Assembly: GCA_040285825.1 (NCBI GenBank)
Contig: JAUPSS010000008.1
Location: 868,001 to 932,000 of the forward strand
Source of the DNA: Eukaryota sp. TZLM1-RC
Taxonomy: Eukaryota > Protista > Metamonada: BaSk clade
Length of the DNA: 64,000 nt
Direction of reading: 5' to 3'
Under the pieces are notes generated by a model. It ran no database searches, had not been told where the DNA came from, and saw only the letters and a program-made list of their open reading frames with translations. Positions 4,501 to 42,300 of the stretch are shown in pieces. Both the position numbers and the translations under genes were made by a program. Position 1 is the first letter of the stretch, and the number at the start of each line of letters is the position of its first letter.

Positions 4501-5739
4501 AGATTCATCGAATCTGCCCCCAAGCATAATAAAAATGTCCGCAATAGAATCTTTTGGGTGTACGTTCTCCACTAGGAAATGCCTTACGACGCCTCTAAGG
4601 TTTCTACCTTGTTGATTATGAGGATACATTTTAGCTATCCAAAATAGTCTGTCGTAAGCTTCTTGATTTCCACTAAAATATATTTTGTGGTCATCAATTG
4701 CATCCCTATGCCATTTGGCAGGCCTGGAAGTAGCAGCTTGATACTTTGAACGAGGAGCGCTGAAATAGCAATCCTCGACTGCACTCATCCCACACGAGAC
4801 TGCCGAATCGGTAAGATCATCCAATCTCTTCAAAAGATTTGGACTCTGATCATAACTCTCGTAGACGACGTCGTCAAGTGTTTTGCCGTGGGCTTCCCCA
4901 AAGAGGAAGGGCCAACGTTTCGCTAAATAGTCACGTCGGACCTTCTCACATTCGGCTGGGTCTACGTCTCCCGCAAGATGCTCTGACTCATTCTCAGCCA
5001 TTTTTAATAATTCGTCATCACTCCAATCCATTACATCTTCGGGAGGATTGGCGATGAGGTCCAATAAGAAATCTCTAGTTACAGCCTCAACTGCCTTTGC
5101 TAATTTCCTTCGGTAAAGACCCTGAGAAGTCCCTTCCGTAGATGGGAAACTAGGAGTTGGATTAGGAGGATTGGGTGTATGAGGTGGTTCATCATCGCTC
5201 TCATCCCCTCTCCTGCTGTAGTTCTGATTAAGAGATCCTCTGGAATCACTTTGAGGTTCCTCACTTGAGCTGATGTCAGAAGTAGGTGAGGAGGGAGTTT
5301 TACGTGAGGAGCTAGTCGTAGACTGTTGCTCGCCTTCGCCTCCTTCGCCTTCTGTACAAGCGTCAGATTTATTACTTACAACAAACGCTTTGAATCTCCG
5401 TTGCTCGCTCGGAGTGAGAAAACTCTTCCTACAAGGAAGGAGCTCCGAGGAGTTATTGGGATATGTGTACAGTTCTGTCACATCCACAACGTGGTTACCT
5501 CTCTCCTTATTGGGGAGGTGGCTTTCTTTCTGAGAGGCAAGGCTCTTCTCAGCGGAAAGCTTACTCTCCTTAGGAGGATTACTCTTCCCGAAGGAAGGAT
5601 TACTCTCCGTAGGTGGTGGATTACTCACCGTGGGTGGTGGATTGTTCTCCTTCAAAGAAGGGACATTACTCTTCCTCAGAGAGGAAGGAGGGTTATCATT
5701 GAGGCTTTTCAGGCCATTAATTAATGATGCTTTATCCAT
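1507..5739 (-). pseudogene. gag-pol (Gag, zinc knuckle, protease, RT) of family 1 copy 1
   Basis: Long ORF; first ATG (MDKASLING) lies 15 nt inside the LTR; ends at a premature TGA where copy 2 has GGA. Confidence 0.9.
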
Positions 5740-5860
5740 ATATGATAACAAAGAATAAGGAATAATTTATTAGAATTTCACCGGCCCTTATAAAGGCCAT
5801 CACTAGTGAACTATGTTATATAAACATAAATGTACTGGACTAATTGTCTACAGTACAACA
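5725..5860 (-). repeat. 136-bp LTR shared by two tandem copies
   Basis: TGTTG...CATCA termini; near-identical to 12502-12637 and 13461-13596; PPT AAGAGAGGGAAAAGGTAG (5861-5878) directly before it; TATA-like TTTATAA in a GGCC stem and AATAAA inside. Confidence 0.95.
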
Positions 5861-8800
5861 CTACCTTTTCCCTCTCTTAGGTCTCGAACGAGAGCTACGA
5901 GTACTGACTGCAGGGGAACTAGTCTTAGATTTGAAATTAGAAGATGCCTTCCGTTTCCTGGTAGTGTGAGGACTAATTGAGCGCAAATATGTTTGATATG
6001 CCTCAGTGCTTTTGACGTCAGCAACTGCGACAGACGAAGTCTCGCCGCCATATTAAACTGCGGTACAATAAGGAACTTTATTATTGTTCGAATCTACGTA
6101 ATCAAAGTGATCTATAATTTTAACGATTACAGATTCTTCCATATCACCAGCAGCAATATTCTTATGCCAATCAAGATCTTCTTTAGAGAAGTCTGAAAGG
6201 TATAGTTTACAATGATTTATACTTGCCGTAGACATCGAACCAGTGACAAGATTCTTGAGTAATAAACTTTTATTGGATTTAACTTCTTCAACGAGAAAAG
6301 GGCCAGCGAAGCAACCATGGAGTTTACCATTAGTCTTTAATCGCAAAACTAAGTCACCTTTATTAAAAGGGTTCCTATGTTTGTTAACTTCAGGCAGTTG
6401 TTGAGCTTGCCTGAGCTCTGCCTCTTCTCTCTTCTTTGAAATCCTTTCAAGTTTTGCTTCAAGATCTTTAACAAAGGGAATATTAACATTACCTGATTTT
6501 ATTAATTCAAACATATTACTAGGATCAGCTCTAGGGCTGTGGTCGCTACCAAACATTAAATTGTAGGGCGAATGACCAGTAACTCTACTAATAGTTGAAT
6601 TGATTTGAAGTTGTACAATTGGGATATATTCACTCCAATTGCTATAATCGCCAGAGTCCACCAAAATCTTTCTTAGACTTTGTAAAATGTCTCTGTGTCG
6701 TCTTTCCACTAAACCATTGCTTTGTGAAAAGCTAGTTAGTGAACGACTTACTACAATGTTTAATAAATCGCATAACCCTTTGAATATGGCATTTGCAAAT
6801 TCAATACCATTGTCACTATGAATCAACAGTGGGATACCAAAAATTGATACTACACTCCATAGGAGGTGATTGGTTGCCTCCACTGCATTCAATTCCTTTA
6901 CAGGGCAAATGATCGTATACCTGGTGAACGAGTCTACAAAAACTATTAAATATTTGAATCCATTATCATCTTGTTGTAATGGTCCAATAGTATCTGCGTT
7001 TAATCGTGCAAAAGGTCGATCAGCCCAAAGAGAGCCAGATGATTCAATGACATTTTTAGGCACATGTGCCGTCTTTTTGACATGCTGGGCATCTCTTAAT
7101 ATGGTTAATCATGTCTTTGCGCATGTCGGGCCAAAAGTAATCACTATTAAGTAATTTCTTTACGCTAGTCGTCACACTAGGATGGCCAACATTTGCATGT
7201 CCATGAATGATAGTTAAAGTCTGCTTCTTTAAACTATCTGGGATGACAATCTTCCCACGATTGTTGGTATACAATTGAATATCTGAATTATAATTGTAAT
7301 CTTTATAATAATCAGGATTTGAATCAACATCTATAAGTTGTTCTTGCCTAATCTTTGAGATCCGAGTGTCAAATAAATCAAATTTAGTATCCTCAACTGC
7401 TTCTTTCAGTGCAGATAAGCTATTGATCGTGGGTAGCTCAATTGTGGACGGTTGAGTAATATCATCCCTTAACAAATTAACTCTAGTTAATAAATTTAAA
7501 TAGGGTTATTGTTCTTCAACTCTGTGAGGTGCCAAGTTTCTCACTTGTTGGACTCGAGGAGTTTTGGGTTTGGCGTCAACCAATCTACACAACATGTCTG
7601 CTCAATAATTCTCCTCGCCTGCAGTGTGGACTACATCAAAATTGAATTCTGACAATATTACTAGCCACCTCTTCACAATTCTGTTCTTTTCAGGAGCTGA
7701 TATGAGGTATGCTAAACTTCTATGATCAGTGAAAATAGTTAATTTCCTCGAAATTAAATAATTTTCTAAACTACTGTCAGTGAGAATTAGTAAAATTGCA
7801 TACAACTCTTTCTGAAGTACAGACCAATTCTTTTGTGAAGTTGTTAATAATCTGCTAAAGAAGGCAATAGGTACAACCTTTCTCTTAATTAGCGGAGTCG
7901 TAGGATCTTTAGGTGGGTTAGCTTCTTGCCATATTACTCCACCTACAGCCACATCGGACGCGTCAGCACTTATTAAAATATGCTTGTCTTCTCAGGGCAA
8001 TTCAAGAGGGATATTTGCTTTGATAAGATTTATAATCTTACCGAAAGCCTCGTCATGATCAGGAGTCCACTTGATTTTTGACGGTTTGTTTCTGGTGAAT
8101 TTGGTGATTGGTTCTATCAAGTCAGACAAATTTGGCAACCAGTCACGTATATAATTGATCGATCCTATAAAACTTTTTAACTTCAGGTAATGTCCTGGGT
8201 TTGGGTAGGTTGATCAGTCCCTTAATCCTAGATTCATCTATATAACGGGTTCTGTTTACAAAAATACTACCTAGAATTTTTATTTCATGTTTGCAAGTGG
8301 TAAAGCTACACTTGGGTAGGCCAAGGTTAACTCTAAAACGTTTAGCGCGTTCTAGGACCGTACCTACTCTAGATAGAAATTCATCCAGGGTCGAAGCTAC
8401 TACTATTATATCATCGATATAAATAAATACGCCCTCAGAATCAAATATTTCCATCATCATGTTTTGGAAGACTGCAGGAACGTTCTTCAAACCAAAACAA
8501 GCCCTTTTAAAACTGATCGACATCCCGGGAATTGATACGGTAGTTTTATCAATATCCTCTTCTGCAATTTTGAGCTGCCAAAATGCCTTAGGTAAATCTA
8601 GAGGTGCTATATAATTAGCTTTACTTAGAAACTCTAAAATGTCGCTAATCCTGGGCAAATTTGCCTCTACAGGTTTAGTTAAATCATTTACTCCACCAAT
8701 ACCACTAAAATCGCCAGTTAATCGTGGTTTCCTGTGATCAGGGTAAATCACAAGACAGATGGGACTACTGAATTGAGACTTTGCGGGCACAGCAAATCCA

Positions 8801-11800
8801 TTACGGATCAATTCGTTAAAAATTTCCTCGGCTACCCGTTGTTTTTCTGGGTTTAATCTTCGAGGTTTCCTTTTGACGACCTTACTTTCGTCATAAAATG
8901 GAATGGTCATCGGCTGACAATCAATTCCATCCGGGTGAGGTAGCCCACTAAATACATTTCTATATTTTTCGAGTAGCACGACTAGGCGTTCCTCGTCCCT
9001 AATGTCATCCAGGCATATTCTACAGCCCAACTCATCTAACTCATGTCTAAATGTGGAATGTCCAAAATCATTACCTAAGTCTGATTTATTACTCAATTGT
9101 TCAATGAATCTAATTAATTGACAAATTCTATTATCGAACTCACATTCAGCATTTAAGATGGTGCGATGTTCGCGTTCCAAATTAATATTAAAACCGTGCT
9201 CCGTGCGTAGCCCCAAGGTTTGTAATAAGTCTCTTCCGATCAAAAAATTATTGGTACCAGGAATGATCTGGAATTCGATCCTTAAAAACACTTGAGTGGC
9301 CAAGCTACCCACATTTAGAGCAAGAACACCACTTGCACATCCCAGGGTTGTGGAGCGAATACCATTTGCCGATAAGTATTCGACAGTCTTATTGTCATTA
9401 ACTGTCATATTACATTTAGAGGCTAAATCCATTGATAATGCTGAAAATGCAGCTCCATTATCAATTTCGCCTTGTACTTCCACGTTATTTATGGTGCAGG
9501 TTAACCAAAGTTCCCCGTTAGAACTTTCTTGGTCCTCTGCTACCCTGGATAGTCTAACACTGTGAATAGAACCCACAGGATTGGATGACTCTCTAAATCT
9601 TTTTAATGGATTTAGGTGATTATAATTCGAATCTGTTTTGCTCAATTTATAAATGGATTTGATTGAATTATTTGTAAGGTTATTGTTAAAAGATGTATAA
9701 TCATCTGATTTATTGCTACTACTTTTACGTTTTCTATCACGTCTTTCACCTCCTTGACGCTTTTTTGAACCAGGTCTTCCCACTAATTTAAAACATTTCT
9801 CTTCAGGATGTTTATTGGTTTTACATAAGTTACACCATTGCTCTGAAGGGATGGGTCGACTGCTTACTCTAGGGTTCTTAAAAGGACCTTTTGACTGGGT
9901 TCGTCCTTTTTGCGCAGGAGCGTGAGCACCAAAAGCTGTTCTTTTCAAATTCATGTCTTTGATCGAAGATTCAAGGCTATTGACCTTGTTAACAAATGCG
10001 TTACCTAAATCGTAAATCGCATCGCCCAGTTTCTCGTTACTTGAATCAAACTTGCCAATCCAAATGATATATGTGTCCATCAATTGATTGTTTGTTTTGT
10101 CGTTAATAGTTTCGAGAAATCTCTTTGCTGGGTAGACGACAGACGGATTACCATCCGTTCCAGGCATAATTGTAGAGCGTCGAAATATATATATATATGA
10201 TCTGCTCCATGAAGGCTGTCCATGAAGATTCAGCAGTCATTTTGCGACTGATCTCAGGTGGTCTTACAGACCTTAAAGCCTTCTCAACATCGGTAGGGTA
10301 TTTGTACTGGGTGCTGAGTAGCAAATATTCCCAGATTTCGGCGTCAGATGGGTTGTTGCCTAACACGTTTGTTCGGCCTCCATAAAAACTCTGCCATTCT
10401 GCGATCACCTTACCCTCGATCATAAATTTCAAATACAAAGGGTCCACTTCGAAGAACATAGATCTAACGAAGTCGTACTGATGAACAGGTTGACCGTATT
10501 TGGTGATCGGCGTAAATGCTCTGGTGGGTCCATCGCGATCCCTAACTGTTTTAGCCCAATTGCCAAAGTTAAGAACGAAGTAGAAGATCTTCTTGGCGTC
10601 AAACGCTTCATTTAACTTAACTAGGCATCTCAGTTTGTCGTCTATTCTTTTCCTCAATTTCTCCTCGTCTGTTACAGGAGTTCTATAAAGACCGAGGGTG
10701 TCGACGAGAGAATCTCTAGGAGCATTCGTTCCTAGGGGTTGCGTGGGTATAGATGATTTTATAACAGATGCTTGTGTAGGAGTTGCTTCACAAGAAGCTC
10801 TCCTAGATGCCAGAGGCCCTACAGAAGGTGTACTAAATAGGTTCATATTCCTCTCTTCTGAAGGCAATGTTTCGCCCAACTTAATGATAAATCTTGTCTT
10901 AGGAGGTTCCTCCTGCACAGGTACGGTCTGGGCTGGTGGCCTTAAATCCACCCAATCTGGTGCATCTTTAGATCCTCTAGGGACCCCTGCTAGTTTATGA
11001 TCATATGGAAGGCAACTGCTCTTTATTAAGACATTCTCAAAAACATTTTGGTCGGGCGAGCTATCAACCCATGCCTTAAGTTTAGCCATCCATGCATCAG
11101 GGTATACTAGTTTTAACTTGTTGGGGCCAACACGTTGCTCTTTCAATTCAATTACCCTTGTGCCGATTTCTCTAATATAGGACTCTTTGGTATGAAATTG
11201 AAGGGTGTCACCTCGAGATTCATCGAATCTGCCCCAAGCATAATAAAAATGTCCGCAATGGAATCTTTTGGGTGTACATTCTCCACTAGGAAATGCCTTA
11301 CGACGCCTCTAAGGTTTCTACCTTGTTGATTATGAGGGTACATCTTAGCTATCCAAAATAGTCTGTCGTAAGCTTCTTGATTTCCACTGAAATATATTTT
11401 GTGGTCATCAATTGCATCCCTATGCCATTTGGCAGGCCTGGGAGTAGCAGCTTGATACTTTGAACGAGGTGCGCTAAAATAGCAATCCTCGACTGCACTC
11501 ATTCCACACGAGACTGCCGAATCGGTAAGATCATCCAATCTCTTCAAAAGATTTGGACTCTGATCATAACTCTCGTAGACGACGTCGTCAAGTGTTTTGC
11601 CGTGGGCTTCCCCAAAGAGGAAGGGCCAACGTTTCGTTAAATAGTCACGTCGGACCTTCTCACATTCGGCTGGGTCTACGTCTCCCGCAAGACGCTCTGA
11701 CTCATTCTCAGGAATTTTTAATAATTCGTCATCACTCCAATCCATTACATCTTCGGGAGGATTGGCGATGAGGTCCAATAAGAAATCTCTAGTTGCAGCC

Positions 11801-12501
11801 TCAACTGCCTTTGCTAATTTCCTTCGGTAAAGACCCTGAGAAGTCCTTTCCGTAGATGGGAAACTAGGAGTTGGATTAGGAGGATTGGGTGTATGAGGTG
11901 GTTCATCATCGCTCTCATCCCCTATCCTGCTGTAGTTCTGATTAAGAGATCCTCTGGAATCACTTTGAGGTTCCTCACTTGAGCTGATGTCAGAAGTAGG
12001 TGAGGAGGGAGTTTTACGTGAGGAGCTAGTCGTAGACTGTTGCGCGCCTTCGCCTCCTTCACCTTCTGTACAAGCGTCAGATTTATTACTTACAACAAAC
12101 GCTTTGAATCTCCGTTGCTCGCTCGGAGTGAGAAAACTCTTCCTACAAGGAAGGAGCTCCGAGGAGTTATTGGGATATGTGTACAGTTCTGTCACATCCA
12201 CAACGTGGTTACCTCTCTCCTTATTAGGGAGGTGACTTCCTTTCTGGGAGGAAGGGCTCTCCTCAGTGTGAAGTTCACTCTCCTTATTGGGAAGGTGGCT
12301 TTCTTTCTGAGAGGCAAGGCTCTTCTCAGCGGAAAGCTCACTCTCCTTAGGAGGATTACTCTTCCCGAAGGAAGGATTACTCTCCGTAGGTGGAGGATTA
12401 CTCACCGTGGGTGGTGGATTGTTCTCCTTCAAATAAGGGACATTACTCTTCCTCAGAGAGGAAGGAGGGTTATCATTGTGGCTTTTCAGGCCATTAATTA
12501 A

Positions 12502-12637
12502 TGATGCTTTATCCATATATGATAACAAAGAATAAGGAATAATTTATTAGAATTTCAGCGGCCCTTATAAAGGCCATCACTAGTGAACTATGTTATATAA
12601 ACATAAATGTACTAGACTAATTGTCCACAGTACAACA
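12502..12637 (-). repeat. 136-bp 5' LTR of family 1 copy 2
   Basis: Same LTR sequence; followed by palindrome CATTAATTAATG (12492-12503). Confidence 0.95.
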
Positions 12638-13596
12638 ACAAAGTCTAAGAAAGATTTTGGTGGACTCTGGCGATTATAGCAATTGGAGTGAATATATCCC
12701 AATTGTACAACTTCAAATCAATTCAATTATTAGTAGAGTTACTGGTCATTCGTCCTACAGTTTAATGTTTGGTAGCGACCACAGCCCTAGAGCTGATCCT
12801 AGTGATATGTTTGAACTAATAAAATCAGCTAACGTTAATATTCCCTTTGTTAAAGATCTTGAAGCAAAACTTGAAAGGATTTCAAAGAAGAGAGAAGAGG
12901 CAGAGCACAGGCAAGCTCAACAACTGCCTGAAGTTAACAAACATAGGAACCCTTTTAATAAAGGTGACTTAGTTTTGCGATTAAAGACTAATGGTAAACT
13001 CCATGGTTGCTTCGCTGGCCCTTTTCTCGTTGAAGAAGTTAAATCCAATAAAAGTTTATTACTCAAGAATCTTGTCACTGGTTCGATGTCTACGGCAAGT
13101 ATAAATCATTGTAAACTATACCTTTCAGACTTCCCTAAAGAAGATCTTGATTGGCATAAAAATATTGCTGCTGGTGATATGGAAGAATCTGTAATCGTTA
13201 AAATTATAGATCACTTTGATTACGTAGATTCGAACAATAATAAAGTTCCTTATTGTACCGCAGTTTGGTATGGCGGCGAGACTTCGTCTGTCCCAGTTGC
13301 TGACGTCAAAAGCACTGAGGCATATCAAACATATTTGCGCTCAATTAGTCCTCACACTACCAGGAAACGGAAGGCATCTTCTAATTTCAAATCTAAGACT
13401 AATTCCCCTGCAGTCAGTACTCGTAGCTCTCGTTCGAGACCTAAGAGAGGGAAAAGGTAGTGTTGTACTGTGGACAATTAGTCTAGTACATTTATGTTTA
13501 TATAACATAGTTCACTAGTGATGGCCTTTACAAGGGCCGGTGAAATTCTAATAAATTATTCCTTATTCTTTGTTATCATATATGGATAAAGCATCA
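12638..13596 (+). mobile_element. 3' part (integrase C-half, chromodomain-like tail, PPT, 3' LTR) of an oppositely oriented family 1 copy
   Basis: Reverse complement of about 5725-6683 with intact W (CTAVWYGG); LTR 13461-13596; flank CATG. Confidence 0.93.
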
Positions 13597-14460
13597 CATG
13601 TCATTTAAAACTCAGAAAATATGAACACTAATCCTCATTGATTGTCCGTGTTGATTGATCTACCTCCTCCAATCATTAAGTTTGCAAATACTTATTCATT
13701 AAATGCATTACCTCCTGCTGATAACCTTGATCGATGGAAAATTGTCGGAAAATGTCTGATGGATTCAAGTTATTATCTGATGTGTGCTCAATAAGTCAAT
13801 TTGGACCAACATTATTGTGTCAATTTTTTTTGCAGTTGTCCACATCATCAAGTTGTCGAAATATACCAAAGACAGAAATGGAGACATGATTCAATTTGAA
13901 ATAATTTTGTTAACCTCTGGCTTCCTTTCCTAGATTATCATGATGTTTACTGCAATTTACCTTATCACACAAATCATTATATAAATTTTCCTTTGGTTGT
14001 GACTGACTTAAGACCTGATCTAATTCTTATCTCAAAATATACAGATGAATCAAGAAGGAATACAGTCCTGATTTGTGAATTAACACCAATGATGGAACAT
14101 CATTTAGATAGTACGATAAAAAGTTCGAAATATCAGAGTCTTGAATTGTTTTTGTCAAATTTGGATTGTTTGGTTGAATCATTTCCTTCCGAAGTTTGAA
14201 CAAGAGAAATAGTTGCTAATATTTGCGTTTCATTGATGAGACAATTACTCATTCCAAAGTCTACAATGAAAACCATCTGTCAAGAACCAGTATTTTAAGC
14301 TGTCAATTGTTCATACCACATTTTTTTCCCTGGAGAACTTCGTATATGGTTGTTTGATGGAAGAGAGTAGATTGAGAGAAACACACCATGGTCAGTGGTT
14401 CAAAAGTGTTGCAAGCTCAGTATTTCACATTGATTATTAATGGGAAAAATTGTTGTTTTT
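13597..14460 (+). mobile_element. Degraded RLE-type non-LTR retrotransposon 3' fragment (family E)
   Basis: WRHDSI, DLRPDLIL, ELT..K..KY motifs of a restriction-like endonuclease; homologous to 25690-26975. Confidence 0.7.
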
Positions 14461-19763: not shown

Positions 19764-19799
19764 TTATTTTTTTTCAAATTATCAATTTTATTAAAAACC

Positions 19800-22560
19800 T
19801 ATAACTCATCATCTAAATAATTCATCTCTCCAAAAACAAAAACTCTAGATGCAACTCTTTTATAGTGAGATCCAAGAGAAAGCAAAGCATCAGAAACCAT
19901 CTTCTACATTTTTTAAAAATAGAAAACACAATTCTATTTTGCCAAAACAATCTGTTGAATTTCTGTTGGTTCTTCTCTTGACAATCATTTCAAAGTTTGC
20001 CAAAAAACGTATAGCCGTTGGGGCAAGCGAACCAAATAGAAAAAATACAAGTGGATACAAATTGTATTTTGCATACTGTTGGCTGGACAATTTGGATAAA
20101 GGTTCACTGTATTTTTTGATTTTGAAATTTTCAGCATTTGAACGAAGATTATGAATTCCAGAATGAGCAAGCCTTTCATTTGAGGCAGTGCAAATATCAA
20201 TAGACAAAACATTCAAGAAATTGAAGGTTCCATCTAATCCAGCTAATATTACATCACCTCTATTATTCTTATGAAAATCATCTTCAGTATCAAACAGAGC
20301 TGACAACAAAGGTTCCAAAAAGGATTCAATTCTTTGAGACTAAACATACAGTATAATTGGTCTCTTACAGCATCGTGAACCTTGCTTCTAAAAGTAATAA
20401 AATGTTTACAATTCAACAAATGAGTAATGGTAATTTTTCGAAAACATTTTGAAAATAAATTATGAGGTAAATCATCAGGCCAGATAAAGGAACGAAATCT
20501 CATATTCAAAGTCCAAGCAGAATCAGTTAAGAGAGTGCCATAAACTTGAGGAATTGTTGTTATTAAGGCAGAAGAAGTACTATCGCACATATCTTGTAAA
20601 AGATTTGCAAAAGCGAGATTCTTTTTCTTGTACTGTTGTTGTCGAACTTAAATTGAATTAGTAGGTTTCATTGTATTTTGACTGATGACGTGATACTCGT
20701 TTATGAATCAGTTTTATTAATAAACTCAGATTTCTCTCTCTCCTTCGTGTGTTCATCTGCCTAACGGCATCAATAATTATTGGCCCTTCTTATTTCAGAT
20801 GACTGTTCCCTCTGTTAACCTGACGTCTCTTTCTTCCATGAAAGTTGAAAGTGTTCTTCTGTTCCTATAGGAGTGAAAGATTTATTCTTCAGTGACTCCT
20901 AAGAAAGAGCTTGTTCCAGCAAGACTCTTGGTCGATTCTTTTCTGTTAGAGTCCCTATCTCTCCAGAAATCCGACGGCTGATCCAGTGACGATGTTCTTC
21001 TCAGACATCTACAATTTGTCGTATCGTTCGCCATGTACGAAGATTTTAGTCTGGCTATGTCAGAACTGATGCTTTATGTCCGTATTGGTGACGTCCGAGA
21101 ACGTATGTCCTGTTACCTGCGACGTTTTTTCCAGGTAAAGAGTAGGGCTTCCGGACTGAAGTTGCCAGACATAGCTTTTTTGAACCGATTTGCCAGAGGA
21201 CTTCTTTTCGTAGGTATCCAACGTTCTCATACCATCGATGCACCGGAGAATTTAACAAACCCCATATCTCCCCTCTATTGAGCCAGTACTGTATTTGTCC
21301 TCAGAAAAATGGGAAAAAGTAGTGTTATTGTCGAACTTAAATTGAATTAGTAGGTTTCATTGTATTTTGACTGATGACGTGATACTCGTTTATGAATCAG
21401 TTTTATTAATAAACTCAGATTTCTCTCTCTCCTTCGTGTGTTCATCTGCCTAACGGCATCAGTACAAGCCAAGTCTAAAATCAAAATCCAAGCTTCCAAA
21501 AATCTTTGACAATTTTTGTTAAAGTTTTCTACAGCAAAACTGCAAATTAAAAGGAGATCGGTTTGGAATTTCTTGAATTGATTGGGGAAAACATTTGGTC
21601 CAGATTTGTGGCGGCAATCTATCGAGTTCAAAAGATAACTCATTCCAATATGGACTGCAACTGGGAACTAACAAATGAGAATCTTCAGGAAATCTACGAG
21701 AAAATTAATAAATAAAATTCTTGTATCCACCCAAAAATGCTGATTGGCACAAAATAGAAGATTTAGTAAATCCAATACCACCCAATTTGCTGAAGAAAAT
21801 AAGTGATTTTTCAACATTCCTGGTTCTACATTCAATAAATCAGCAAAAAATTGTGTTTTCAATGAATTAAAGGAACGACAAAAATCTAATGCTATGGAAG
21901 GAGCACAAGATCTCAAAATGTGGGTTATTCTCCCTGTGTAGCAAATTTTAAGCATGAACAATTCGATATGTTTTTCTAAATCTAAAGAAGAAATTGAATC
22001 AAGTTCAATTTTGATTTTTTCCAAAATAACTCGTAATTCATTCTGAATTTGAGACACATTTCCTAACCAACAACCAAGGAACTTAACAGCATCACTACTA
22101 TAATTTGTAAAAGGGACAACAGAATCGTTTATCAGAAGATCGATCCTGAGCACAAGAACCAATCAGAAGGCATTTGCTCACATTAAGATGAAGCCCAATA
22201 TTGTCATAAGAATCGGCAATTTTCTAAGCAACCAGTTGTAGTAAATCAAATGAACCAATCAAGGATATATCATCCATATAAGCAACTAGTTTTATAAAAG
22301 GGTATTTTTGCGTAATGATATCTAAAATTTTGTGATAAGCTAAACAAACCAATAATGAGCCTTAGGGATCACCTTGTTTCACACCTGAAACTTATTTTAA
22401 ACCAAATGAATTAAATATTAAATCTGATGCTTTACCATAAAATTGGTAGAAAAAACTTGATAGCGAAGGAAAATCAGATTTATTTACTTCAAATATTCCA
22501 TTTCGCTTTACAGAATTAAAAGCATTCTTAAAGTCAAGATTAAAAATAAAGTTAAAGCAT
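19800..22560 (-). mobile_element. CRE-like RLE non-LTR retrotransposon family A, degraded, interrupted by an LTR element
   Basis: DFKNAFNS, QGDP, YMDD, HLLNC..HDAVRD, RGD motifs; collinear with 43058-44980. Confidence 0.9.
20634..21461 (+). mobile_element. 828-bp non-autonomous (TRIM-like) LTR element, family 2
   Basis: 139-bp LTRs at 20634-20772 and 21323-21461 (one mismatch), TG..CA ends, 4-bp TSD GTAC, PPT AGAAAAATGGGAAAAAGTAG, palindrome CAATAATTATTG, decayed ORF inside. Confidence 0.93.
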
Positions 22561-22679
22561 ATAGTTATTGTAGTTATTTTTCACAATTTCACATGGATTC
22601 ATTACATTAGTTGTAAGTTTCAATCAATGTAATGACAACAATTTTATATTTTAATTTGTTGAACTTGGAAACTTAACAA

Positions 22680-23225
22680 AATAAACTCATAACTAATGGG
22701 ATGAAATTCATTAAACCAAGATTTTCTCTACATAATCTTGATCTGCTTGCTGTCTGGCTAAAGCATCTTTTATTGGATTGAAAAACCGAGGCAATCTATT
22801 AATAATAGCAAATTGAATTCAAGAGCGCCATAAAAAGATATCAAACCTTTTCATCGTTTTTTCTTGAACCATTTTTTGGAAATCTTTCAAAAAAGTTCCT
22901 GCTTCTACTGATAGTTTTCCGTTTATAGAAAATGAGAAGGAAATAAAAACAAGTGGTCTGTTTCTATCAGCATTAGCTTCCTCAATATCTTTGTCATATT
23001 TTCTATGTTCTTCTTTGGCCTTAAATTCTAGAGCATCTACAGGATTATGATTTCTTCTTTGAACCAAAATGTCATTTGGAACATTACATGAGACAAAGTC
23101 AACAATAGCTTCAGAATTATCAATCCAATCACAGTATATATCACCTCTGTCATCAGACCCAAAATTATTCAATGACAGTGTTTCTTTCAGCAGAGGCTCT
23201 TTGATGCACGAGATTCTTGCAGTTG
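22680..23225 (-). mobile_element. 5'-truncated CRE-like non-LTR family B fragment
   Basis: KEPLL..DDRGDIYCDW..K.RKY; matches the 3' part of 49028-50278. Confidence 0.88.
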
Positions 23226-25379: not shown

Positions 25380-26975
25380 TGTTGATTATTTGTATTTATA
25401 CTAGTGTAAAGGCGGTCTTGGTGTTCCAGAATTTACCTGATCGTATAAAGAATGTCAAATTCCGAAATATTATGATTTTGACTAGAAAACATTATCTGAA
25501 TTGATTGAACAAAGAAGGTTTTTATAAAATCGGAAATTTAATCTAATTGGAAATTTGGAAAATTATCATTCAAAAGAAATATATTACCATATATTTAAAT
25601 TGGAATACAAATTATTTCCAGATTCACAAAAGGTGAAAATCAAAGCAGAATTGACACATTCATGGAGTTAAAAGTACAATCTTCATTGAACAACGTCATA
25701 TTAAACTGAGAAAATATGAACACTAATCATCATTGTTTGTTCATGTTAATTGATCTTGGTACAGGACTTATTGAGTTTGCAGTAAATTTTTCTCTGAATG
25801 TATGGACCACTGCTGATAACCTATACTGATCGAAAATTTTGTTCAGTATCACCTCTATCTGCAACGAATTGACCTCCCAACAGCAAGAGAACATCAGTCA
25901 TTCTGTCTCTTGGTTACACCAAAAGGTAACTTCATCCCATTTTGGGAGAATGTTATTTGGGTCATAGGTGTGGTCACCTATGTTACTTTCGCTCTCCGTT
26001 TGAGGAGCATTCTTCACGAGTGAAGTGCTACTTTCCTCAAGGGGAAGATTACTCTTCCGCGAGGAAGGACTCTTCTTATGTGGAGGAATACTCTTCTTAA
26101 TAGGAGGGATGTGACTGCTAACATCATGCCCGTTTGAGCCATCAATTAATGATGCCTGTGTCATAATGAAAACAGCTAAAAGGTAAAGATAAGTTTATTC
26201 AATTTCACTGGCCCTTATAAAGGCCATCACTACCGAACTCTATACTAGAGTAATTGTCCACATTGCAACAATTTGACGGAAAAGGTCTGATGGATCTAAA
26301 CTTATGTTTCCCGATGTGTTTATTAAGACAATCTGGTCCAGCAACATCATGTCGCTTTTCATGCAATTGTCCAAGTTATCAAACTCCAGAAATACATAAT
26401 AGACCTAAACGGAGCCATGCTTTAATTTTAAATAATTTGTTTAACCTCCAACTTCCTTTCCTAGATCATTATGATGTTTACTGTAACTTATTCGAATACA
26501 TCAATCATTATGTTAATATTGGTTTGGCTGCGAAAGATTTGAGACCTGGTTCTATTCTCATCACAAAAGGGATAATGAAAACAAAAGGAAAGCAGCCTTA
26601 ATTTGTGAGTTAACCTCTTTGATGGAACAATATTTATGCAGTAAACATATATGAAAAGTACAAAACAATAGAGTCTTGAATTGTAATTGTCAAAATTAAT
26701 TTTTTTTGAATCATTTCCTGTTGAAGTTTCAGCAAGAGAAATAGTTGCTAATAGCTGCTTTTCATTAATGGAAAGATTACTCATTCCAGAGTTTGCAGTG
26801 AAAACCAGCTGTAATTAATCAGCATTTCATCATCCCAAAAGCTTGTACCGCAACCAAAAAATCTAGGATTTGGTTGTATGATGGAGTAGGATAAGTTGAA
26901 AACCATGGGCAGTGATTTAAAAATGTCGCAAGCTCAATATTTCAGTTGATTGTTAATAGGAAAAAATGTTTTTCG
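25380..26975 (+). mobile_element. Degraded RLE non-LTR family E copy, interrupted at 25840-26270
   Basis: GGLG thumb motif near 25410; collinear with 13597-14460. Confidence 0.7.
25840..26270 (-). mobile_element. One-LTR truncated relative of family 1 (121-bp LTR 26150-26270 plus gag start)
   Basis: LTR shares GTGATGGCCTTTATAAGGGCC and the GCATCA end with family 1; gag MTQASLIDG resembles MDKASLING; ATTT on both flanks. Confidence 0.85.
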
Positions 26976-27419: not shown

Positions 27420-28583
27420 CTATCTTCTTTTTAACAAAGGGCTTTCTACTGGAACAACTATTTTACCAAAACTTCGCTTAACATTTTCAGTAATAATATC
27501 AAGGTTAAGTGAATCTCCGAAAATTTCTCCCAAATTCAGTTCAGGACAAACACCAAACACATCACTAGCCTTTAAATTCTTTTGAACTTCCAACTGTTTT
27601 TCAAGTTCTGGATCACAAGCCCAGCTAGGAACGGGACCAGGAAGAGTCGCACCAAAAGAAAGAGTCTTATCTACTGTATCTTCTTCCTTTTTCCGTTCCT
27701 CGCGCATTTTACTCAATAAATTATTGTATTTTCCTTTTGGAGCTGCTGCTGAAACTGGTGCTGAAACTGCATTGAGAGTGGTTGGGGGTGTTGGTCTTGA
27801 CTTTGTTGACTCTGGTTTTAATGGAGTTTTTCCTTTAGAAATAGGTATTTTTCTGCTAGAAACTGGTTTGCTTGGGGTACAATCATTAGCACCAGACTTA
27901 GCATTAACATTATTGGAACCAGCTAGTCTTAATGCACGTTCCTGCCGTTCCCTCATTTTCAGTTTCCTTTCTTCTTCTCTTTTCTTTCTTTCCCTTGCTT
28001 GCTCAGCTGCTTTCTGAGCCTGTGCAAGAGCAGGAACATTGGGTCGCTTTATTTTGGGTTCCTGTCGACTAGAAGACAAAGACTTTCGCGGGGAAGCTAA
28101 CAGAGTGCTTGTACATTTGAGATTGGATAAATGGGAAGTTTTTGTAGGAACAGTTGGCCTTTTCTGAGGTATTGACTTTGTACATGTCTGTTTAGGACGA
28201 GAATCAGGTGTGATGGTCTTAATAGCCTTAGGTGGAGAACTAGAGGGTTGACTCTGAAAATGATTTGGTGGTGATTTCTTTGGAGATGTTACAACAGTTG
28301 ATGGTCGCTCTGGTGACTGAAAACGATGCGGAGGTGTTGAAGGTACGCTTGAACATTGGACTGGTGTAGATGGTATAGGATCGTGTAATGTCAATGGAGA
28401 CAAAGGAGGAGGAATGTGTGATACAAAGTTCTCACCGAGAAGCTGAGCAAGTTTGGAAGGTAGCGGTGGAGGATTATTGTTCAAATGAACTTTAAGCTGA
28501 TGATCATCAACAAAGGTCTTCAATTTCCGTATACCATCAATATAAAGAACTTGAAGGGAATTGACAGCATCTGCGAGACACAT
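27420..28583 (-). CDS. INCENP: INCENP-like chromosomal passenger protein
   Basis: S/T-P-rich region, charged helix, C-terminal IN-box VPSWA..L..QL..Q..DVFG..LNLGEIF. Confidence 0.75.
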   Translation of the reverse strand: MCLADAVNSLQVLYIDGIRKLKTFVDDHQLKVHLNNNPPPLPSKLAQLLGENFVSHIPPPLSPLTLHDPIPSTPVQCSSVPSTPPHRFQSPERPSTVVTSPKKSPPNHFQSQPSSSPPKAIKTITPDSRPKQTCTKSIPQKRPTVPTKTSHLSNLKCTSTLLASPRKSLSSSRQEPKIKRPNVPALAQAQKAAEQARERKKREEERKLKMRERQERALRLAGSNNVNAKSGANDCTPSKPVSSRKIPISKGKTPLKPESTKSRPTPPTTLNAVSAPVSAAAPKGKYNNLLSKMREERKKEEDTVDKTLSFGATLPGPVPSWACDPELEKQLEVQKNLKASDVFGVCPELNLGEIFGDSLNLDIITENVKRSFGKIVVPVESPLLKRR

Positions 28584-28626
28584 CAATAAATTGAAAAAAA
28601 TGAAAAAGGGGCATATAAATTCTAAT

Positions 28627-28791: not shown

Positions 28792-29064
28792 TTTACTAGT
28801 ATAACAACTGTTTCAGACATCAGTTTTGCATTGTCATTAACTGCAAAATGGGTCCCTGTTCCAAAAACTGTTTCCGCTAGACAAATTGTAGTGCAGTTTT
28901 TGCGTTTTTCTTGATGTAGCTCTGTTATCTGGAGGTTTTCGATCCATTCAATGTGGTTGGAATTCATTGGTGAATAAATCATCAAGTCGTTCCATTTGTA
29001 AATATTCACCTTCATAAGTTGAAGAATCAAATTTATTCATGTTCTTCTGAAAAACTAAAACAAT

Positions 29065-29430
29065 ATTTATTGAACATGCGCACTTATAAAATTAATTCAT
29101 AACTGATGGGGCGAAATTCATTGAACCAAAATTTCCTCTACAAAAACTTGATCTGCTTGCTGTCTCGCTGAAGGTTCTCTAATTCGATTGAAAAACAGAG
29201 GTAATCTATTGATAATGGCAAATTGAATCCGAGAGCGCCATAAAAAGATATCAAATCTTTTCATTGTTTTTTCTTGAACCATTGTTTGGAAGTCATTCAA
29301 AAAATTTGCTGCTTCTACTGATAGTCTTCCGTTTATCGAAAATGGGAAAGGAATAAAAACTAGCTGTGTATTTCTACCAGCATTGTCTTCTTCGATATCT
29401 TTGTCATATTTTCTATGTTTTTCTTTTGAC
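29065..29430 (-). mobile_element. CRE-like family B 3' fragment
   Basis: KEKHRKYDKDIEE..FLWRSRIQFAIINRLP..EEILVQ* plus the conserved 3' tail. Confidence 0.88.
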
Positions 29431-35049: not shown

Positions 35050-35490
35050 AAAGCTCCACGTCCTCAAAACCTACATCTCTCACATCGAATTAGTAAATTA
35101 CTAAAGATTCAGAAAACTTACCAAAAGAAGAACTGAAAGTGTACCAGAAATTAATTTCACCATTCCCTTTCAAATTGAAGAGACAATGCTGTTTTGACAG
35201 TGGGCATGATTGAAAATTCTTCCAAATCCTTTTCTTAACAATTACACTGAAATATTCTAGGAATGCCAAAGCAGCCTTAGCTAATGAACCGAACAAAGAA
35301 AAAACAAAGGGACATTTAATATAAGAACACGTGAATTGTCATTGACAGAAGAAAGAGGTTTCGCGTAGTTAACAGTTTTATATTTTTCTCCAGTAAAATA
35401 TTTATTGAACATGCACAAGTAATAAAATTAATTCATAACTAATGGGACGAAAATCATTAAACGAAGATTTCCTCTACAAAATCTTGATCT
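35050..35490 (-). mobile_element. Adjacent 3' tips of two CRE-like non-LTR subfamilies
   Basis: SLFGSLA..FLE.F..IVKKR-type end, followed by a family B tail (35400-35490). Confidence 0.7.
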
Positions 35491-35601
35491 CCAGTAATGA
35501 AATGTACATTAGAAGAATTGCAAGTGAAATGAAAATGACCATATTGCAACTTCTTTTTCTCATTCATGTAAGTTCCATCTGGTTCTGCTTACCTTAGAGA
35601 T

Positions 35602-38989: not shown

Positions 38990-39365
38990 TTTTATTGAAC
39001 TACAGCACTCAATAAAAACATCAGAACTAATAGAACAAGTTTCATTAAACCAAGATTTTCTCCACAAAAAAATCTGATCTGTTTGTTTTCTCCTCATTGC
39101 TTCTCTTATTTGAATACAGAACCAAGGGATTCTATATATAATGGCCAATTGAATTCAAGAGCACCAAAAACAGTTTTGAAATCTCTTCATTGTATTTACG
39201 TGAACAATGATCAATTTTGCGAATACTCCTGCTTCTACTGATTAGTCTCCTGTTATTAGAAAATGGAAAGTAATTAAATCAAGTTGTCTTTTTCTATTAG
39301 TAATATCTTTCTTTATGTCTTTGTCATATATATTAGGTTTCATTTTGATTTCAAGAGCATCTATC
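38990..39365 (-). mobile_element. Old degraded family B non-LTR 3' fragment
   Basis: YDKDIKK..NRK, IREAMRRKQTDQIF similarity to family B. Confidence 0.7.
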
Positions 39366-39369
39366 AAGA

Positions 39370-42300
39370 GATAATATATGCAGCTCAGCTGTTTTAAATC
39401 AAGGTCTTCACTCATTGTTATTGGAAAAGGGTGTTTGTGAAAACAAGTCGTCAGATTCTTCACTTTTTGTAACCATTGTACCACGAAAATTTGGATTGTG
39501 TGCCACTAATGAAGCATTTGTAACAAAAATGAGATTATATTTGAACATCCCCATTAATCAATTATTATCAAAAGAAAAATGTATTTGTTCGAATTCACCT
39601 CTGTTGCTAGTTCACGTGAAAAGAGGATAAGATACTTTATTATACTAGCACCTAACATTTCAGTAAGTGCCACGTCATTATGAATTAAAACTAAATCTAG
39701 ATTACATTGACTCTCTCTTCTTTTTCTTCATGGTTCTCTTCTTTCTCTCTCGAGGGGGAATGGTGATACCGTGAGTTGTAACATAGTCTCGGAGGTGAGA
39801 GTTTATCTTGCTGCCATCACGGAGAGAGGAGAGCGGTTGCCAAGAAATAGGACCGTGGGAAAATTTAACCAGATACCATTGGTCATTGGTGTGGTCGAGG
39901 ATATCTTCAACGATGAATTCGTCAAAATCTGAGGCAGCTAATCGACGAGCTGAGTTGTTCAAAACGTTGGGAAGAAAAGGTATGAGATCATGGGTAGAGG
40001 CTGTCATGGTCTGGTCGAATATGATGGACTTGAGGTTAAAAGAAGAGTTTGAACGTTTTGAGGTGATTTGATATGGACCCAAGAACTTAAACAACATATT
40101 GGGAGCTCTATTCTTTAATAAAACCAGGTCATCTGATGCAAAACTGTGTTCGAGGGTTTCGGTGGAAGTGTGAGAGTGTTGTTGGGTGTCAGCATCGGAC
40201 CAGATCTGCTTAAGGGTGCTAGTTAGGTTGGAGATTTAGTCATTAGCGTGGCGTTTGGACCTAGAAGTGCCTGAGAGGTTATCATTGGAGGGTGTTAGCA
40301 AGAGGTCTAAAAGATTTCGTCTTGGTCTTGTATCGTGTCCGAACAGAAGGTGAAATGGTGAATATTTTCCCGTGGCAGTGCTTGGAGATGAGTTCAGTAT
40401 GAGTTGTATCAATGGGAGTTTGCTGGACCAGTCCCTATGATTATTAGATTCGGTAGCCAGTTTTCTGATTAAACTCAATACTTTTTGATTTCTACGTTCA
40501 ACTAGGCCATTTGATGGGGAATGGTGTGGAATGGTAATAGTGCTCGTGATGTTTAGTTTGCTTAGAAGTGCCTTCATAATGTCGTTGGCAAACTCTTTGC
40601 CTCCGTTATGACGTATGTTCATGGGGATGCCAAATATGGAAAAGATTCGATAGACTAGGGTATTGGCGGTGGCTTCAGCCGAGATGAACGTTATGGGTTT
40701 GAGGAGGGTGAATCTAGTGAATGCATCGGTCATCACAAGAATGTACCTGTTGTTCACATTGTTCTTAGGTAGGGGACATATGACGTCTAAATGCAAGCTT
40801 TCGAATGGTAAAGAGGAGTAGAAGCTGCCAGTGTGAGCTGGTTTCGTCTTTGAAGTTTTTGCGGATTTTAGACAAACACCGCAATGTTGAATAAACAACT
40901 TCACGTCCTTTTGAATGTCGGGCCAGGTTAAACCAAGTGACTCGAGGTATTCGATAGTACGATCAGGTCCAAGGTGACCACTGCAACCTTGATCCGCAGC
41001 GGTCAGAAAATTCTCTATGACTTCTTTCGAAAAGATCTTTGGGGTAAGCTTCTCAACTGTCGTTGATAGAACTTTTATCTTTTGAAAAGATCAGTCCTTG
41101 ATAACATGTCAGCAATGAAGTTGGATTCTCCAGGGGTGTGAACGATCCTGAAATCGAATTGCGCTAGGACTGGTTTCCATCGAGCGACTAATGGGGAATC
41201 TGTTGTTTCAAAGTAGACCAGGTTCTTGTGATCCGTGTAGATCAGAAGAGGTCTTCCTAAAAGGAAGTTGGAGAGAGGGGAGTATGAAAGAGTAGCAACT
41301 ATGGCATATAATTCTTTTTTGTTGGTAGACCACCATTGTTGAGCTTTGCTCAGAGTTCTAGAGAAGGAACTCAAAGGAGTGAGCTTTCGCTGTTCGAGGG
41401 GTATTGCGTCGTTGGGGTTATCGGAAAGGTCAGCCCAGATTGCACCGCCTATACCAACGTCGGAGGCATCGGTGGTGATCACAATTTGCTGGTTGTCCTC
41501 AGGTAGAGTTAGGGGTACGGCGTTCTCGATTGCTGTTTTGATTTCTGAATACTGCGCTCTTCCACTGGTGAAATTTTGAACTTCTGTCTTTTTTGGAGCA
41601 ATTTGTATAAGGGGGCAGACAAAGAAGCATGATTGGGAATCAAATCTCTTACGTAGATTGCAGATCCCAGAAAAGCACGTAACTGTTTTTGGTATTTGGG
41701 AAGAGGGAGTGGGGTAATAGCTGATGTTCTAGAAGGGGAGATATGTCGTTTGCCATCGTGAAAGTCGCTTTCAAGTATGGTAATTGAGCAAGAGTCGTCG
41801 GAGATTACAGTCTTGGGACCAGAAAGCCGAGCCCTAATATTCCGAGCCCTGGGAAGGGTGCGGTCTAGGTTGGTCAAAAATTCTTCAAAAGTTCCAGCTA
41901 ACACGATGAGATCATCAATATAGATGTCAGAATAGGGGGTCTTGAACACTGCGTTCATTCGATTTTGGAAGTATCCAGACACGTTCTTCAAACCGAATAC
42001 AGCCCGTGAATACTGAATGAACAGTGATCACTGTTGCTAGTTCACGTGGAAAGAGGATAAGATACTTTATTATACTAGCACCTAACATTTCAGTAAGTGC
42101 CACGTCATTATGAATTAAAACTAAATCTAGATTACACCTCAACTCACTTTGCGCCATGCTCTGAATTGCTCTATATTGATAACTTATCGTTCTTCATTAC
42201 ATGATGCTGTTAGAGACACTGTTTTCAATATGGCACAAACTGCAAGAATATCCTGTATCAAAGAGCCCCTGCTGAAAGAAACACTTTCTCTGAATAATTT

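What the first reader, a model, noticed from the sequence alone, without database searches (positions are those of the whole stretch)
5715..42035. LTR retrotransposons with a sequence-variable 12-nt palindrome in place of the tRNA primer-binding site
Seen: every 5' LTR is followed by CA-N8-TG, where CA is the LTR end and the 12-mer is self-complementary. Family 1 has CATTAATTAATG (5715-5726, 12492-12503), family 2 CAATAATTATTG (20771-20782), family 3 CAGTGATCACTG (42022-42033, extendable to 16 nt), and the family 1 relative CATTAATTGATG (26140-26151). The LTRs of families 1-3 are otherwise unrelated, so symmetry, length and position are conserved while sequence is not. The single deviation forms a G.U pair only in the sense RNA. 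Established: a canonical PBS begins TGG within a few nt of the LTR and matches a tRNA 3' end; Tf1-type self-priming pairs the PBS with the transcript 5' end. Neither fits here. Inference: a sibling RNA cut after N8 could anneal antiparallel and prime minus-strand DNA exactly at the terminal CA, or the palindrome is a combined dimerisation and priming signal.
Basis: partly seen in the sequence, partly recalled or inferred. Interest (0 to 1): 0.92.

Follow-up and report, generated by a model that had tools for sequence, protein, structure and literature searches.

The report
Palindromic primer site in protist retrotransposons
A clade of very compact Ty3/gypsy retrotransposons in the free-living metamonad Skoliomonas has, exactly where a tRNA primer-binding site should be, a 12-base self-complementary sequence that changes between families only by compensating changes. 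This suggests these elements start reverse transcription from their own RNA rather than from a host tRNA.

Summary
Confirmed. The window comes from Skoliomonas (TZLM1-RC). It holds Ty3/gypsy elements with tiny LTRs (105-139 nt), 4-bp target duplications and a purine tract before each 3' LTR.

In every element whose 5' LTR boundary I could fix by its 3' LTR and target duplication, the last two LTR bases (CA), eight bases and TG form a 12-nt palindrome. This holds for 4 families in the window and 8 more from three Skoliomonas genomes. A distant chromodomain element from an unrelated read set shows the same at an LTR end inferred from its contig ends.

In the 12 aligned elements, 71 of 72 pair positions are complementary and 4 of 6 pairs show changes on both sides. 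Shifted-register controls pair at 56% or less. Sister elements on an RT tree differ by compensatory swaps.

The palindrome is translated in most families, untranslated in others and in another frame in one. The constraint is therefore on nucleic acid.

I found no Tf1-type complement in the LTR, no downstream hairpin partner and no tRNA-like sequence.

Best reading (about 0.55): a self-derived RNA primer, from a sibling genome annealed through the palindrome. This was not tested; no RNA run was listed.

The closest precedent is the unexplained palindromic "conserved hairpin site" of fungal GalEa copia elements. First-stage notes flag the same feature elsewhere in this genome.

The parts
1..5860 (-). 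Family 1 copy A (cut by the window start): gag-PR-RT ORF 1507-5742, RH/IN-Zn 346-1242, 5' LTR 5725-5860
   Evidence: Pfam RVT_1, Asp_protease, RT_RNaseH, Integrase_H2C2; tblastn map; self-BLAST
5725..5860 (-). Family 1 LTR, 136 nt, TGTTGTAC...GCATCA. It is shared as the 3' LTR of copy B and the 5' LTR of copy A. The gag ATG (5742-5740) lies inside it.
5715..5726 (-). Palindrome CATTAATTAATG: LTR-terminal CA (5726-5725) + TTAATTAA + TG. It falls in gag codons 5-9 (ASLING).
5861..5878 (-). Polypurine tract of copy B (AAGAGAGGGAAAAGGTAG), immediately 5' of the LTR
5861..12637 (-). Family 1 copy B (frameshifted gag-pol, integrase 6053-7063), 5' LTR 12502-12637
12492..12503 (-). Palindrome CATTAATTAATG of copy B
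12638..13596 (+). Inverted 3' fragment of a family 1 element (823 nt of integrase end plus PPT, then LTR 13461-13596). It fixes the LTR 3' end at ...GCATCA.
20634..21461 (+). Family 2 non-autonomous (TRIM-like) element: LTRs 20634-20772 and 21323-21461 (99.3% identical), 550-nt interior, PPT GGGAAAAAGTAG, TSD GTAC (20630-20633 and 21462-21465)
20771..20782 (+). Palindrome CAATAATTATTG at the family 2 5' LTR end (non-coding here)
26150..26270 (-). LTR of the family 1 relative (TGTTGCAATG...GGCATCA), with its gag start inside
26140..26151 (-). Near-palindrome CATTAATTGATG (one U.G pair in sense RNA)
39602..42136 (-). Family 3 deletion derivative: 105-nt LTRs 42136->42032 and 39706->39602 (99% identical), TSD GAGG. 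The interior is only RT C-terminus, RH and IN, joined directly to the palindrome.
42022..42033 (-). Palindrome CAGTGATCACTG (16 nt with flanks, 42020-42035)

Best explanation
The 12-mer is the minus-strand primer-binding site of a clade of compact Ty3/gypsy elements, and the primer comes from the element's own RNA.

Shown:
- The LTR ends at CA.
- The next ten bases (N8+TG) are the exact reverse complement of CA+N8.

Inferred:
- Two genomic RNAs pair antiparallel through the palindrome, as 10-14 bp of RNA-RNA duplex.
- One RNA is cut after N8, by analogy with the RNase H cut in Tf1.
- Its 3' OH then sits opposite the first base after the other RNA's LTR. Extension therefore copies A, then C, then U5-R, which puts the cDNA end exactly at the observed LTR terminus.
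- The same duplex would also act as a dimer linkage.

Because primer and site are the same sequence, any family can drift to a new palindrome by paired changes. That is the pattern seen.
For: 1. Position. In 12 elements the palindrome starts at the last two LTR bases. For 10 of them the end is fixed independently by the 3' LTR plus a 4-bp TSD. For family 1 it is fixed by the LTR of the inverted fragment that stops at 13596. For the family 1 relative it rests on homology to family 1. The L011 contig, with an LTR end inferred from its matching contig ends, shows the same. Any LTR element must prime at this boundary.

2. Covariation. 71 of 72 cells pair. Four of six pairs change on both sides. 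No shuffle out of 500 reaches the observed score. Slid registers pair at 19-56%. L003 has an LTR ending in TA and the partner is TA.

3. Repeated compensatory swaps between sister elements on an RT tree: L004 GTACGTAC vs L010 GTAATTAC, L008 vs L005/L006, and family 1 TTAATTAA vs L003 ATAATTAT.

4. At least five different N8 sequences coexist in one host assembly (GCA_040285825.1: L001, L002, L005, L008 and a 92%-identical family 1 protein). With the window's own families the count is seven. A single host RNA cannot match them all; the element's own RNA always does.

5. A nucleic-acid constraint, not a protein one. The site is translated in most families, untranslated in family 2, L002, L003 and L011, and read in another frame in L007.

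6. The two non-autonomous derivatives in the window keep it. The family 3 deletion stops right after it.

7. Alternatives fail: no Tf1-type complement and no CHSeq2-type partner, and no conserved hairpin.

8. Predicted homoduplex energies are -7 to -24 kcal/mol for 12 of the 13 elements.

9. The only imperfect sites are in the oldest or most degenerate copies: L002, whose LTRs are 94.9% identical, and the family 1 relative.
Against: - There is no direct evidence for dimerisation, cleavage or priming. No RNA run was listed, so the transcript start, poly(A) site and any cut 5' fragments are unknown.
- Cleavage inside an RNA-RNA duplex has only the Tf1 precedent.
- A primer made of the whole 5' fragment (R-U5-CA-N8) would complicate plus-strand transfer unless it is trimmed.
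- Several duplexes are AT-rich and weak (about -7 to -10 kcal/mol for the 12-mer; L002 only -3.9).
- In most families the site lies in gag codons 5-9, so pairing would compete with translation.
- The host tRNA set was not available (no tRNA in the window or in five loci).
Confidence: 0.55

Rival explanations
1. The palindrome is only an RNA dimerisation or packaging signal, like a retroviral dimer initiation site. Minus-strand priming uses some other primer that happens to start at the LTR end.
For: Covariation shows sense-sense pairing but not priming. Palindromic dimer signals are established in retroviruses (general knowledge; discussed in PMC5445492).
Against: No other conserved sequence exists at or after the LTR end that could bind a primer; the downstream bases are variable gag coding. 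Retroviral dimer signals sit in hairpin loops and occur in addition to a tRNA PBS. Here there is no conserved hairpin and no PBS. The register is locked to the LTR terminus in all 13 elements, which a pure dimer signal does not need.
Confidence: 0.2
2. An ordinary tRNA primes at the TGG that begins 8 nt after the LTR. N8 is a spacer later trimmed by integrase, and its symmetry is incidental.
For: 8 of the 12 aligned elements read TGG at positions 11-13, and 5 of them read TGGC.
Against: The sequences after TGG differ in every family and are gag codons. Seven of the 8 TGG cases lack the G expected at PBS position 5 (complement of tRNA base 72; general tRNA knowledge). L003, L007, L008 and family 3 lack TGG. 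The 3' LTRs end at CA followed directly by the TSD, so 8 extra bases would have to be removed each cycle. The model does not explain 71 of 72 paired cells or the compensatory changes.
Confidence: 0.06
3. Tf1-type self-priming in cis: the 5' end of the same transcript folds back onto the site.
For: Tf1/Tf2 and relatives are Ty3/gypsy elements that self-prime with an 11-nt duplex next to U5 (general knowledge; cited in PMC5445492 and PMC6934838). L011 carries a chromodomain, as the Tf1 group does.
Against: The longest perfect complement between any LTR and N8+TG+4 is 4-7 nt, no better than shuffles (fraction of shuffles at least as good: 0.21-1.0). Its position is inconsistent between elements.
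Confidence: 0.04
4. The symmetry serves a DNA- or protein-level function (a dimeric binding site, or a conserved gag N-terminal peptide), or it is chance in AT-rich sequence.
For: Several N8 are AT-rich. In most families the site encodes a loosely similar peptide (A/S)(T/S)(V/L/I)(R/I)(T/N/I)G.
Against: Nine different N8 sequences that all keep the symmetry argue against a fixed protein recognition site. The peptide covaries as the nucleotides dictate (V..T, L..N, I..I). The site is non-coding or in another frame in five elements. Chance is excluded. Two distant Ty3/gypsy elements from a metagenome lack it.
Confidence: 0.05

Closest known systems
[quoted passage not shown] 2017, PMC5445492)
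   Same: There is no tRNA-type PBS. The LTR ends in CA and is followed at once by CTGATCAGT or CTAATTAGT, that is, CA + a palindromic N8 + T. This is the same register as here, with the symmetry centre 4 nt past the LTR. The cores TGATCA and TAATTA also occur here. The authors proposed that it replaces the PBS and found no fitting model.
   Different: - Copia, not gypsy; 5-bp TSD; LTRs of 138-311 bp.
- Two sequences cover 85% of families, so there is little covariation.
- Described as 10 nt (from the last A).
- Usually paired with a downstream CHSeq2 to form a hairpin with a fixed A/A mismatch. No such partner exists here.
- Whether the 12th base is G there was not checked.
Tf1/Tf2-type self-priming (Schizosaccharomyces pombe; also proposed for Maggy, Skippy, Cft-1, sushi)
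   Same: Ty3/gypsy elements that do without tRNA. The element's own RNA supplies an 11-nt primer that pairs immediately after U5. The primer is released by a cut in an RNA-RNA duplex. Site and primer covary between families.
   Different: In Tf1 the two partners are separate segments of one RNA (the transcript 5' end and the PBS) and pair in cis. Here no second segment exists. The site pairs with itself, which requires a second RNA molecule.
Retroviral dimer initiation sites (e.g. the HIV-1 SL1 palindromic loop)
   Same: A short palindrome near the 5' end of the genomic RNA that pairs two genomes. Its sequence varies between lineages while the symmetry is kept.
   Different: Those palindromes sit in a hairpin loop downstream of, and in addition to, a tRNA PBS. 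Here there is no hairpin and no PBS, and the site abuts the LTR end.
Canonical tRNA-primed Ty3/gypsy elements (e.g. Ty3, tRNA-iMet)
   Same: Gene order gag-PR-RT-RH-IN, TG..CA LTRs, purine tract, short TSD.
   Different: No tRNA-complementary PBS; LTRs of only 91-156 nt; gag usually starts inside the LTR.

Membership tests
Ty3/gypsy (Metaviridae) LTR retrotransposon | Pol domain order PR-RT-RNase H-integrase, with gag upstream | tested here: met
   Pfam hits in that order on the minus strand; tblastn map; relatives carry RVT_1, RT_RNaseH, Integrase_H2C2 and rve
Ty3/gypsy (Metaviridae) LTR retrotransposon | Direct LTRs with TG..CA ends, a target-site duplication and a polypurine tract before the 3' LTR | tested here: met
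   Ten elements have both LTRs and a 4-bp TSD. One exception ends in TA (L003).
Ty3/gypsy (Metaviridae) LTR retrotransposon | PBS complementary to a tRNA 3' end or tRNA fragment | tested here: inconclusive
   There is no conserved tRNA-like sequence. The host tRNA set was unavailable: no tRNA in the window or in five loci, and no Rfam hit.
Tf1-type self-priming elements | About 11 nt at the transcript 5' end (inside the LTR) complementary to the PBS | tested here: not met
   The best LTR-to-PBS complement is 4-7 nt, no better than shuffles, and at inconsistent positions
Tf1-type self-priming elements | RNase H-dependent cleavage of the RNA to release the primer | not testable with these tools
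   Needs biochemistry or RNA-end mapping. No RNA run was listed.
Fungal GalEa CHS-bearing elements | A palindrome that includes the last LTR base(s), immediately after the 5' LTR | tested here: met
   compared with PMC5445492 section 10 and its supplementary files 4 and 5
Fungal GalEa CHS-bearing elements | A downstream CHSeq2 complementary to CHSeq1, forming a hairpin | tested here: not met
   The best 9-mer complements within 70 nt match 5-7 of 9 bases, no better than shuffles. No conserved hairpin.
Fungal GalEa CHS-bearing elements | Ty1/copia domain order (integrase before RT), GalEa clade | tested here: not met
   Integrase follows RT-RH
Retroviral-type dimer initiation site | Palindrome displayed in the loop of a stable hairpin, separate from the PBS | tested here: not met
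   Folding of 100 nt around each site shows only the trivial 4-bp mini-hairpin of the palindrome itself

The most novel reading that the evidence does not exclude
Reverse transcription in these elements is primed in trans by the co-packaged sibling genome. A 12-bp palindromic RNA-RNA duplex spans the U5 end, is nicked after N8, and is extended. One self-complementary site thus acts as dimer linkage, primer and primer-binding site. This would be a third way to prime an LTR element, besides tRNA and Tf1-type cis self-priming. It may be shared with fungal GalEa copia elements, and so either ancient or convergent.
Probability: 0.45. Interest if true: 0.88.

Novelty: new variant of a known kind. 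Interest (0 to 1): 0.78.

Why it matters
How LTR retroelements choose a primer is a defining step of their replication. Only tRNA priming and Tf1-type self-priming are established.

This work supplies the covariation evidence that was missing for the one published analogue, the fungal GalEa site. It shows that the selected property is pairing of the site with an identical copy of itself, locked to the LTR terminus. That turns a vague "unusual PBS" into a specific, testable mechanism.

It also extends the feature from fungal copia to gypsy elements of a deep-branching metamonad. The elements themselves are extremely compact: LTRs of 91-156 nt, with gag starting inside the LTR.

If confirmed, independence from host tRNAs would help explain how such elements diversify into many co-resident families. 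LTR annotation tools that require a tRNA-type PBS would probably miss or down-rank them.

Tried and rejected
I rejected this.
- A 959-nt LTR model for family 1 (5725-6683). Rejected because that stretch encodes the integrase C-terminus.
- Tf1-type complement and GalEa CHSeq2-type partner: none above chance.
- Conserved secondary structure around the site: none.
- tRNA genes and Rfam families: none in the window; no tRNA in five loci.
- RNA-seq evidence: no run was listed.
- The near-palindrome at 29061 (same 12-mer as L002). It is the poly(A)-signal end (TTCAATAAATA) of an unrelated multicopy repeat, not an LTR end.
- L009 and L019: no LTR pair could be defined, so they were left out. L006 has only a 5' LTR and is the same family as L005.
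- Metagenome scan for relatives: only 7 distant loci at 26-43% identity. The two with clean or fairly clean LTR ends (L014; L012 is less certain) have 370-480-nt LTRs and no palindrome. This is a small control, not a survey.
- Literature searches found no report of a palindromic PBS in Ty3/gypsy elements. The Skoliomonas genome paper does not discuss retrotransposons.
Full report
**What the window is**

The best protein hits of the long minus-strand ORF are hypothetical proteins of 'Eukaryota sp. TZLM1-RC' (92% identity). Weaker hits come from GEM-RC1 and TZLM3-RCL. These are the Skoliomonas isolates, free-living haloalkaliphilic metamonads (PMC11603281 and PMC11316075). The genome paper does not discuss retrotransposons.

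The ORFs carry aspartyl protease, RVT_1, RT_RNaseH, Integrase_H2C2 and integrase core, in Ty3/gypsy order.

**Anatomy in the window**

Self-BLAST shows family 1 as two head-to-tail copies on the minus strand:
- Copy A runs from 1 to 5860 and copy B from 5861 to 12637. They share one LTR.
- A 959-nt inverted 3' fragment lies on the + strand at 12638-13596.

I first considered a 959-nt LTR. That stretch encodes the integrase C-terminus, so the LTR is only the 136 nt at 5860->5725. It reads TGTTGTAC...GCATCA and is preceded by the purine tract AAGAGAGGGAAAAGGTAG. The fragment's LTR stops at 13596 and is followed by unrelated DNA. This fixes the LTR end at the CA of the palindrome. The gag ATG (5742) lies inside the LTR, and the palindrome falls in codons 5-9.

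The other families:
- Family 2 (20634-21461, + strand) is an 828-nt non-autonomous element. It has 139-nt LTRs (99.3% identical), TSD GTAC, and a related empty site near 43885.
- Family 3 (42136->39602, minus strand) has 105-nt LTRs (99% identical) and TSD GAGG. Its interior starts in the middle of RT, directly after the palindrome.
- The family 1 relative has its LTR at 26270->26150.

In all of them the 12-mer is the last two LTR bases + N8 + TG on the sense strand. The window holds only 5 exact CA-N8-TG palindromes against 1.3 expected, and four are these sites.

**Relatives**

I fetched the genomic loci of ten related polyproteins from the three Skoliomonas assemblies, plus one Logan contig.

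Eight new elements have both LTRs (91-156 nt), a 4-bp TSD and a purine tract. At the 5' LTR end they read:

| Locus | 12-mer | Note |
|---|---|---|
| L001 | CAATACGTATTG | |
| L002 | CAATAAATATTG | central A/A mismatch; its LTRs are only 94.9% identical |
| L003 | TAATAATTATTA | LTR ends in TA and the partner is TA |
| L004 | CAGTACGTACTG | |
| L005 | CAGTAATTACTG | |
| L007 | CAATTATAATTG | |
| L008 | CAGTACGTACTG | |
| L010 | CAGTAATTACTG | |

L006 is a copy of the L005 family.

L011 is a chromodomain-bearing element with 38% identity over the PR-RT query region (about 47% over the RT core), from read set SRR12623521. It reads ...CCAACA|GTAATTAC|TG about 55 nt upstream of its gag ATG. Its LTR end is inferred from matching sequence at the two contig ends, without a TSD.

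L009 and L019 gave no definable LTR pair and were left out.

**Is the symmetry selected?**

I aligned 24 nt around the site in 12 elements without gaps.
- 71 of 72 cells form standard pairs.
- 4 of 6 pairs have changes on both sides (13 cells).
- No shuffle out of 500 reaches the observed covariation score.
- Sliding the 3' partners by 1-3 columns drops pairing to 19-56%.
- A seventh pair (U.G or A-U) is present in 8 of 12. An eighth is not.

On an RT tree, sister elements differ by compensatory swaps:
- L004 vs L010, at the central pair;
- L008 vs L005/L006, the same swap independently;
- family 1 vs L003, at the outer N8 pair.

The site is translated in most families, with peptides ASLING, ATVRTG, ATVITG and SSIRIG that covary as the nucleotides dictate. 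It is untranslated in family 2, L002, L003 and L011, and read in another frame in L007. The constraint is therefore on nucleic acid, and specifically on pairing of the site with an identical copy of itself.

**What it is not**

- No LTR contains a complement of N8+TG+4 longer than 4-7 nt, no better than shuffles. Tf1-type cis self-priming is therefore not supported.
- No downstream partner of the GalEa CHSeq2 type exists, and no conserved hairpin.
- A tRNA annealing at the frequent TGG (positions 11-13) is unlikely for four reasons. The following bases differ in every family. Seven of the 8 TGG cases lack the G that complements tRNA base 72 (general tRNA knowledge). Four elements lack TGG altogether. 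The 3' LTRs end at CA, directly abutting the TSD.
- I could not compare with host tRNAs. None lie in the window or in five loci, and Rfam finds nothing.
- Two distant Ty3/gypsy elements from a metagenome have 370-480-nt LTRs and no palindrome.

**Mechanism (inference)**

An LTR element must start minus-strand DNA at the base after U5, and the only conserved feature there is the palindrome. N8+TG is the reverse complement of CA+N8. An RNA ending ...CA-N8-3'OH is therefore the perfect primer, and it places the first DNA bases opposite A and C of the LTR end. The only RNA guaranteed to carry that sequence in every family is the element's own genome.

At least five different N8 sequences coexist in one host assembly, and seven if the window's own families are counted. 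This argues against a host primer.

The simplest model has four steps:
1. Two co-packaged RNAs form a 10-14-bp duplex. Predicted energy is -7 to -24 kcal/mol for 12 of the 13 elements, and weaker for L002.
2. One RNA is nicked after N8.
3. It is extended on the other RNA.
4. The duplex also serves as the dimer linkage.

Open problems remain. The nuclease is unknown. A long 5' primer tail would need trimming before plus-strand transfer. Several duplexes are weak and AT-rich. Pairing would compete with gag translation. No RNA run was listed for this sequence, so transcript ends are unknown. From sequence alone, each LTR has an AATAAA 35-55 nt before its end, and most have a TCA-type initiator-like motif shortly before the ATG. 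This would make R-U5 only about 20-40 nt, which is speculative.

**Comparison with what is known**

The closest published case is the 'Conserved Hairpin Site' of fungal GalEa copia elements. There the LTR ends ...CA and is followed by CTGATCAGT or CTAATTAGT. This is palindromic from the last LTR base, sits at the PBS position, and no existing model fits it (PMC5445492). The register is the same as here.

The differences are the superfamily, a 5-bp TSD, only two dominant sequences, and a usual downstream hairpin partner.

Tf1-type self-priming is the closest mechanism, but it pairs two separate segments in cis. I found no report of a palindromic PBS in Ty3/gypsy elements.

**Verdict**

The mechanism is plausible but untested.

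First-stage notes of this scan flag the same palindrome on other pieces of this genome. They also flag the family 3 deletion, the TRIM-like element, the tandem array and the LTR compaction in this window. I checked the in-window ones myself.

Noticed in passing
window 1-12637 (minus strand): Two family 1 copies lie head to tail and share one LTR (LTR-interior-LTR-interior, then the window edge). Copy B has frameshifts in gag-pol and a 66-nt length difference in the proline-rich gag repeat region.
   Followed up: partly
window 12637/12638: The exact 5' end of copy B's LTR abuts the integrase region of an inverted 959-nt 3' fragment of the same family. This looks like an insertion into, or recombination with, an older copy. 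The other half was not found in the window.
   Followed up: partly
window 1507-5742 (minus strand): Family 1 gag is unusually long. About 950 aa precede the protease, with an N-terminal run of S/N-P-P-rich repeats and one CCHC knuckle near residue 860.
   Followed up: no
window 22648-23235, 29062-29428, 35397-35490, 38991-39329, 39371-39601 + 42137-42808, 47984-48442, 49434-50333, 52626-53048: A multicopy repeat of about 900 nt overlaps the end of an ORF with no Pfam match (49028-50278). Every copy ends at TTCAATAAATA, which looks like a poly(A) signal. The family 3 element is inserted into one copy. The identity of this repeat was not established.
   Followed up: partly
window 19776-22554, 43036-44976, 63070-64000: A further repeat of about 2 kb occurs in three copies (86-90% identical). 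One copy carries the family 2 insertion. Its nature was not determined.
   Followed up: no
window 13739-14280 and 26270-26812: Stretches 75% similar to each other lie next to a family 1 LTR and next to the family 1 relative's LTR, on different sides relative to LTR orientation. Unexplained.
   Followed up: no
window 46321-47538 (minus strand): A further RH-integrase fragment of a related gypsy element (32-54% identity to family 1). Its 5' end is missing, so it could not be scored for the palindrome.
   Followed up: no
L019 4930-5256 vs 10267-10596, and 5381-5790: A related RT-IN gene in the same genome is flanked by 330-nt inverted (not direct) repeats, and has a 410-nt self-inverted stretch upstream. 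Either two elements lie head to head or the architecture is different.
   Followed up: no
L011 (Logan contig of SRR12623521): A chromodomain-bearing gypsy element from an unidentified organism has the same CAGTAATTACTG after its LTR end, in its 5' UTR. The feature may therefore reach beyond Skoliomonas.
   Followed up: partly
window 27420-28586, 53928-55838, 61113-62306 (all minus strand): Apparent intron-free host genes lie among the repeats: an INCENP-like protein, a protein kinase and a TRAPPC13-like protein.
   Followed up: no
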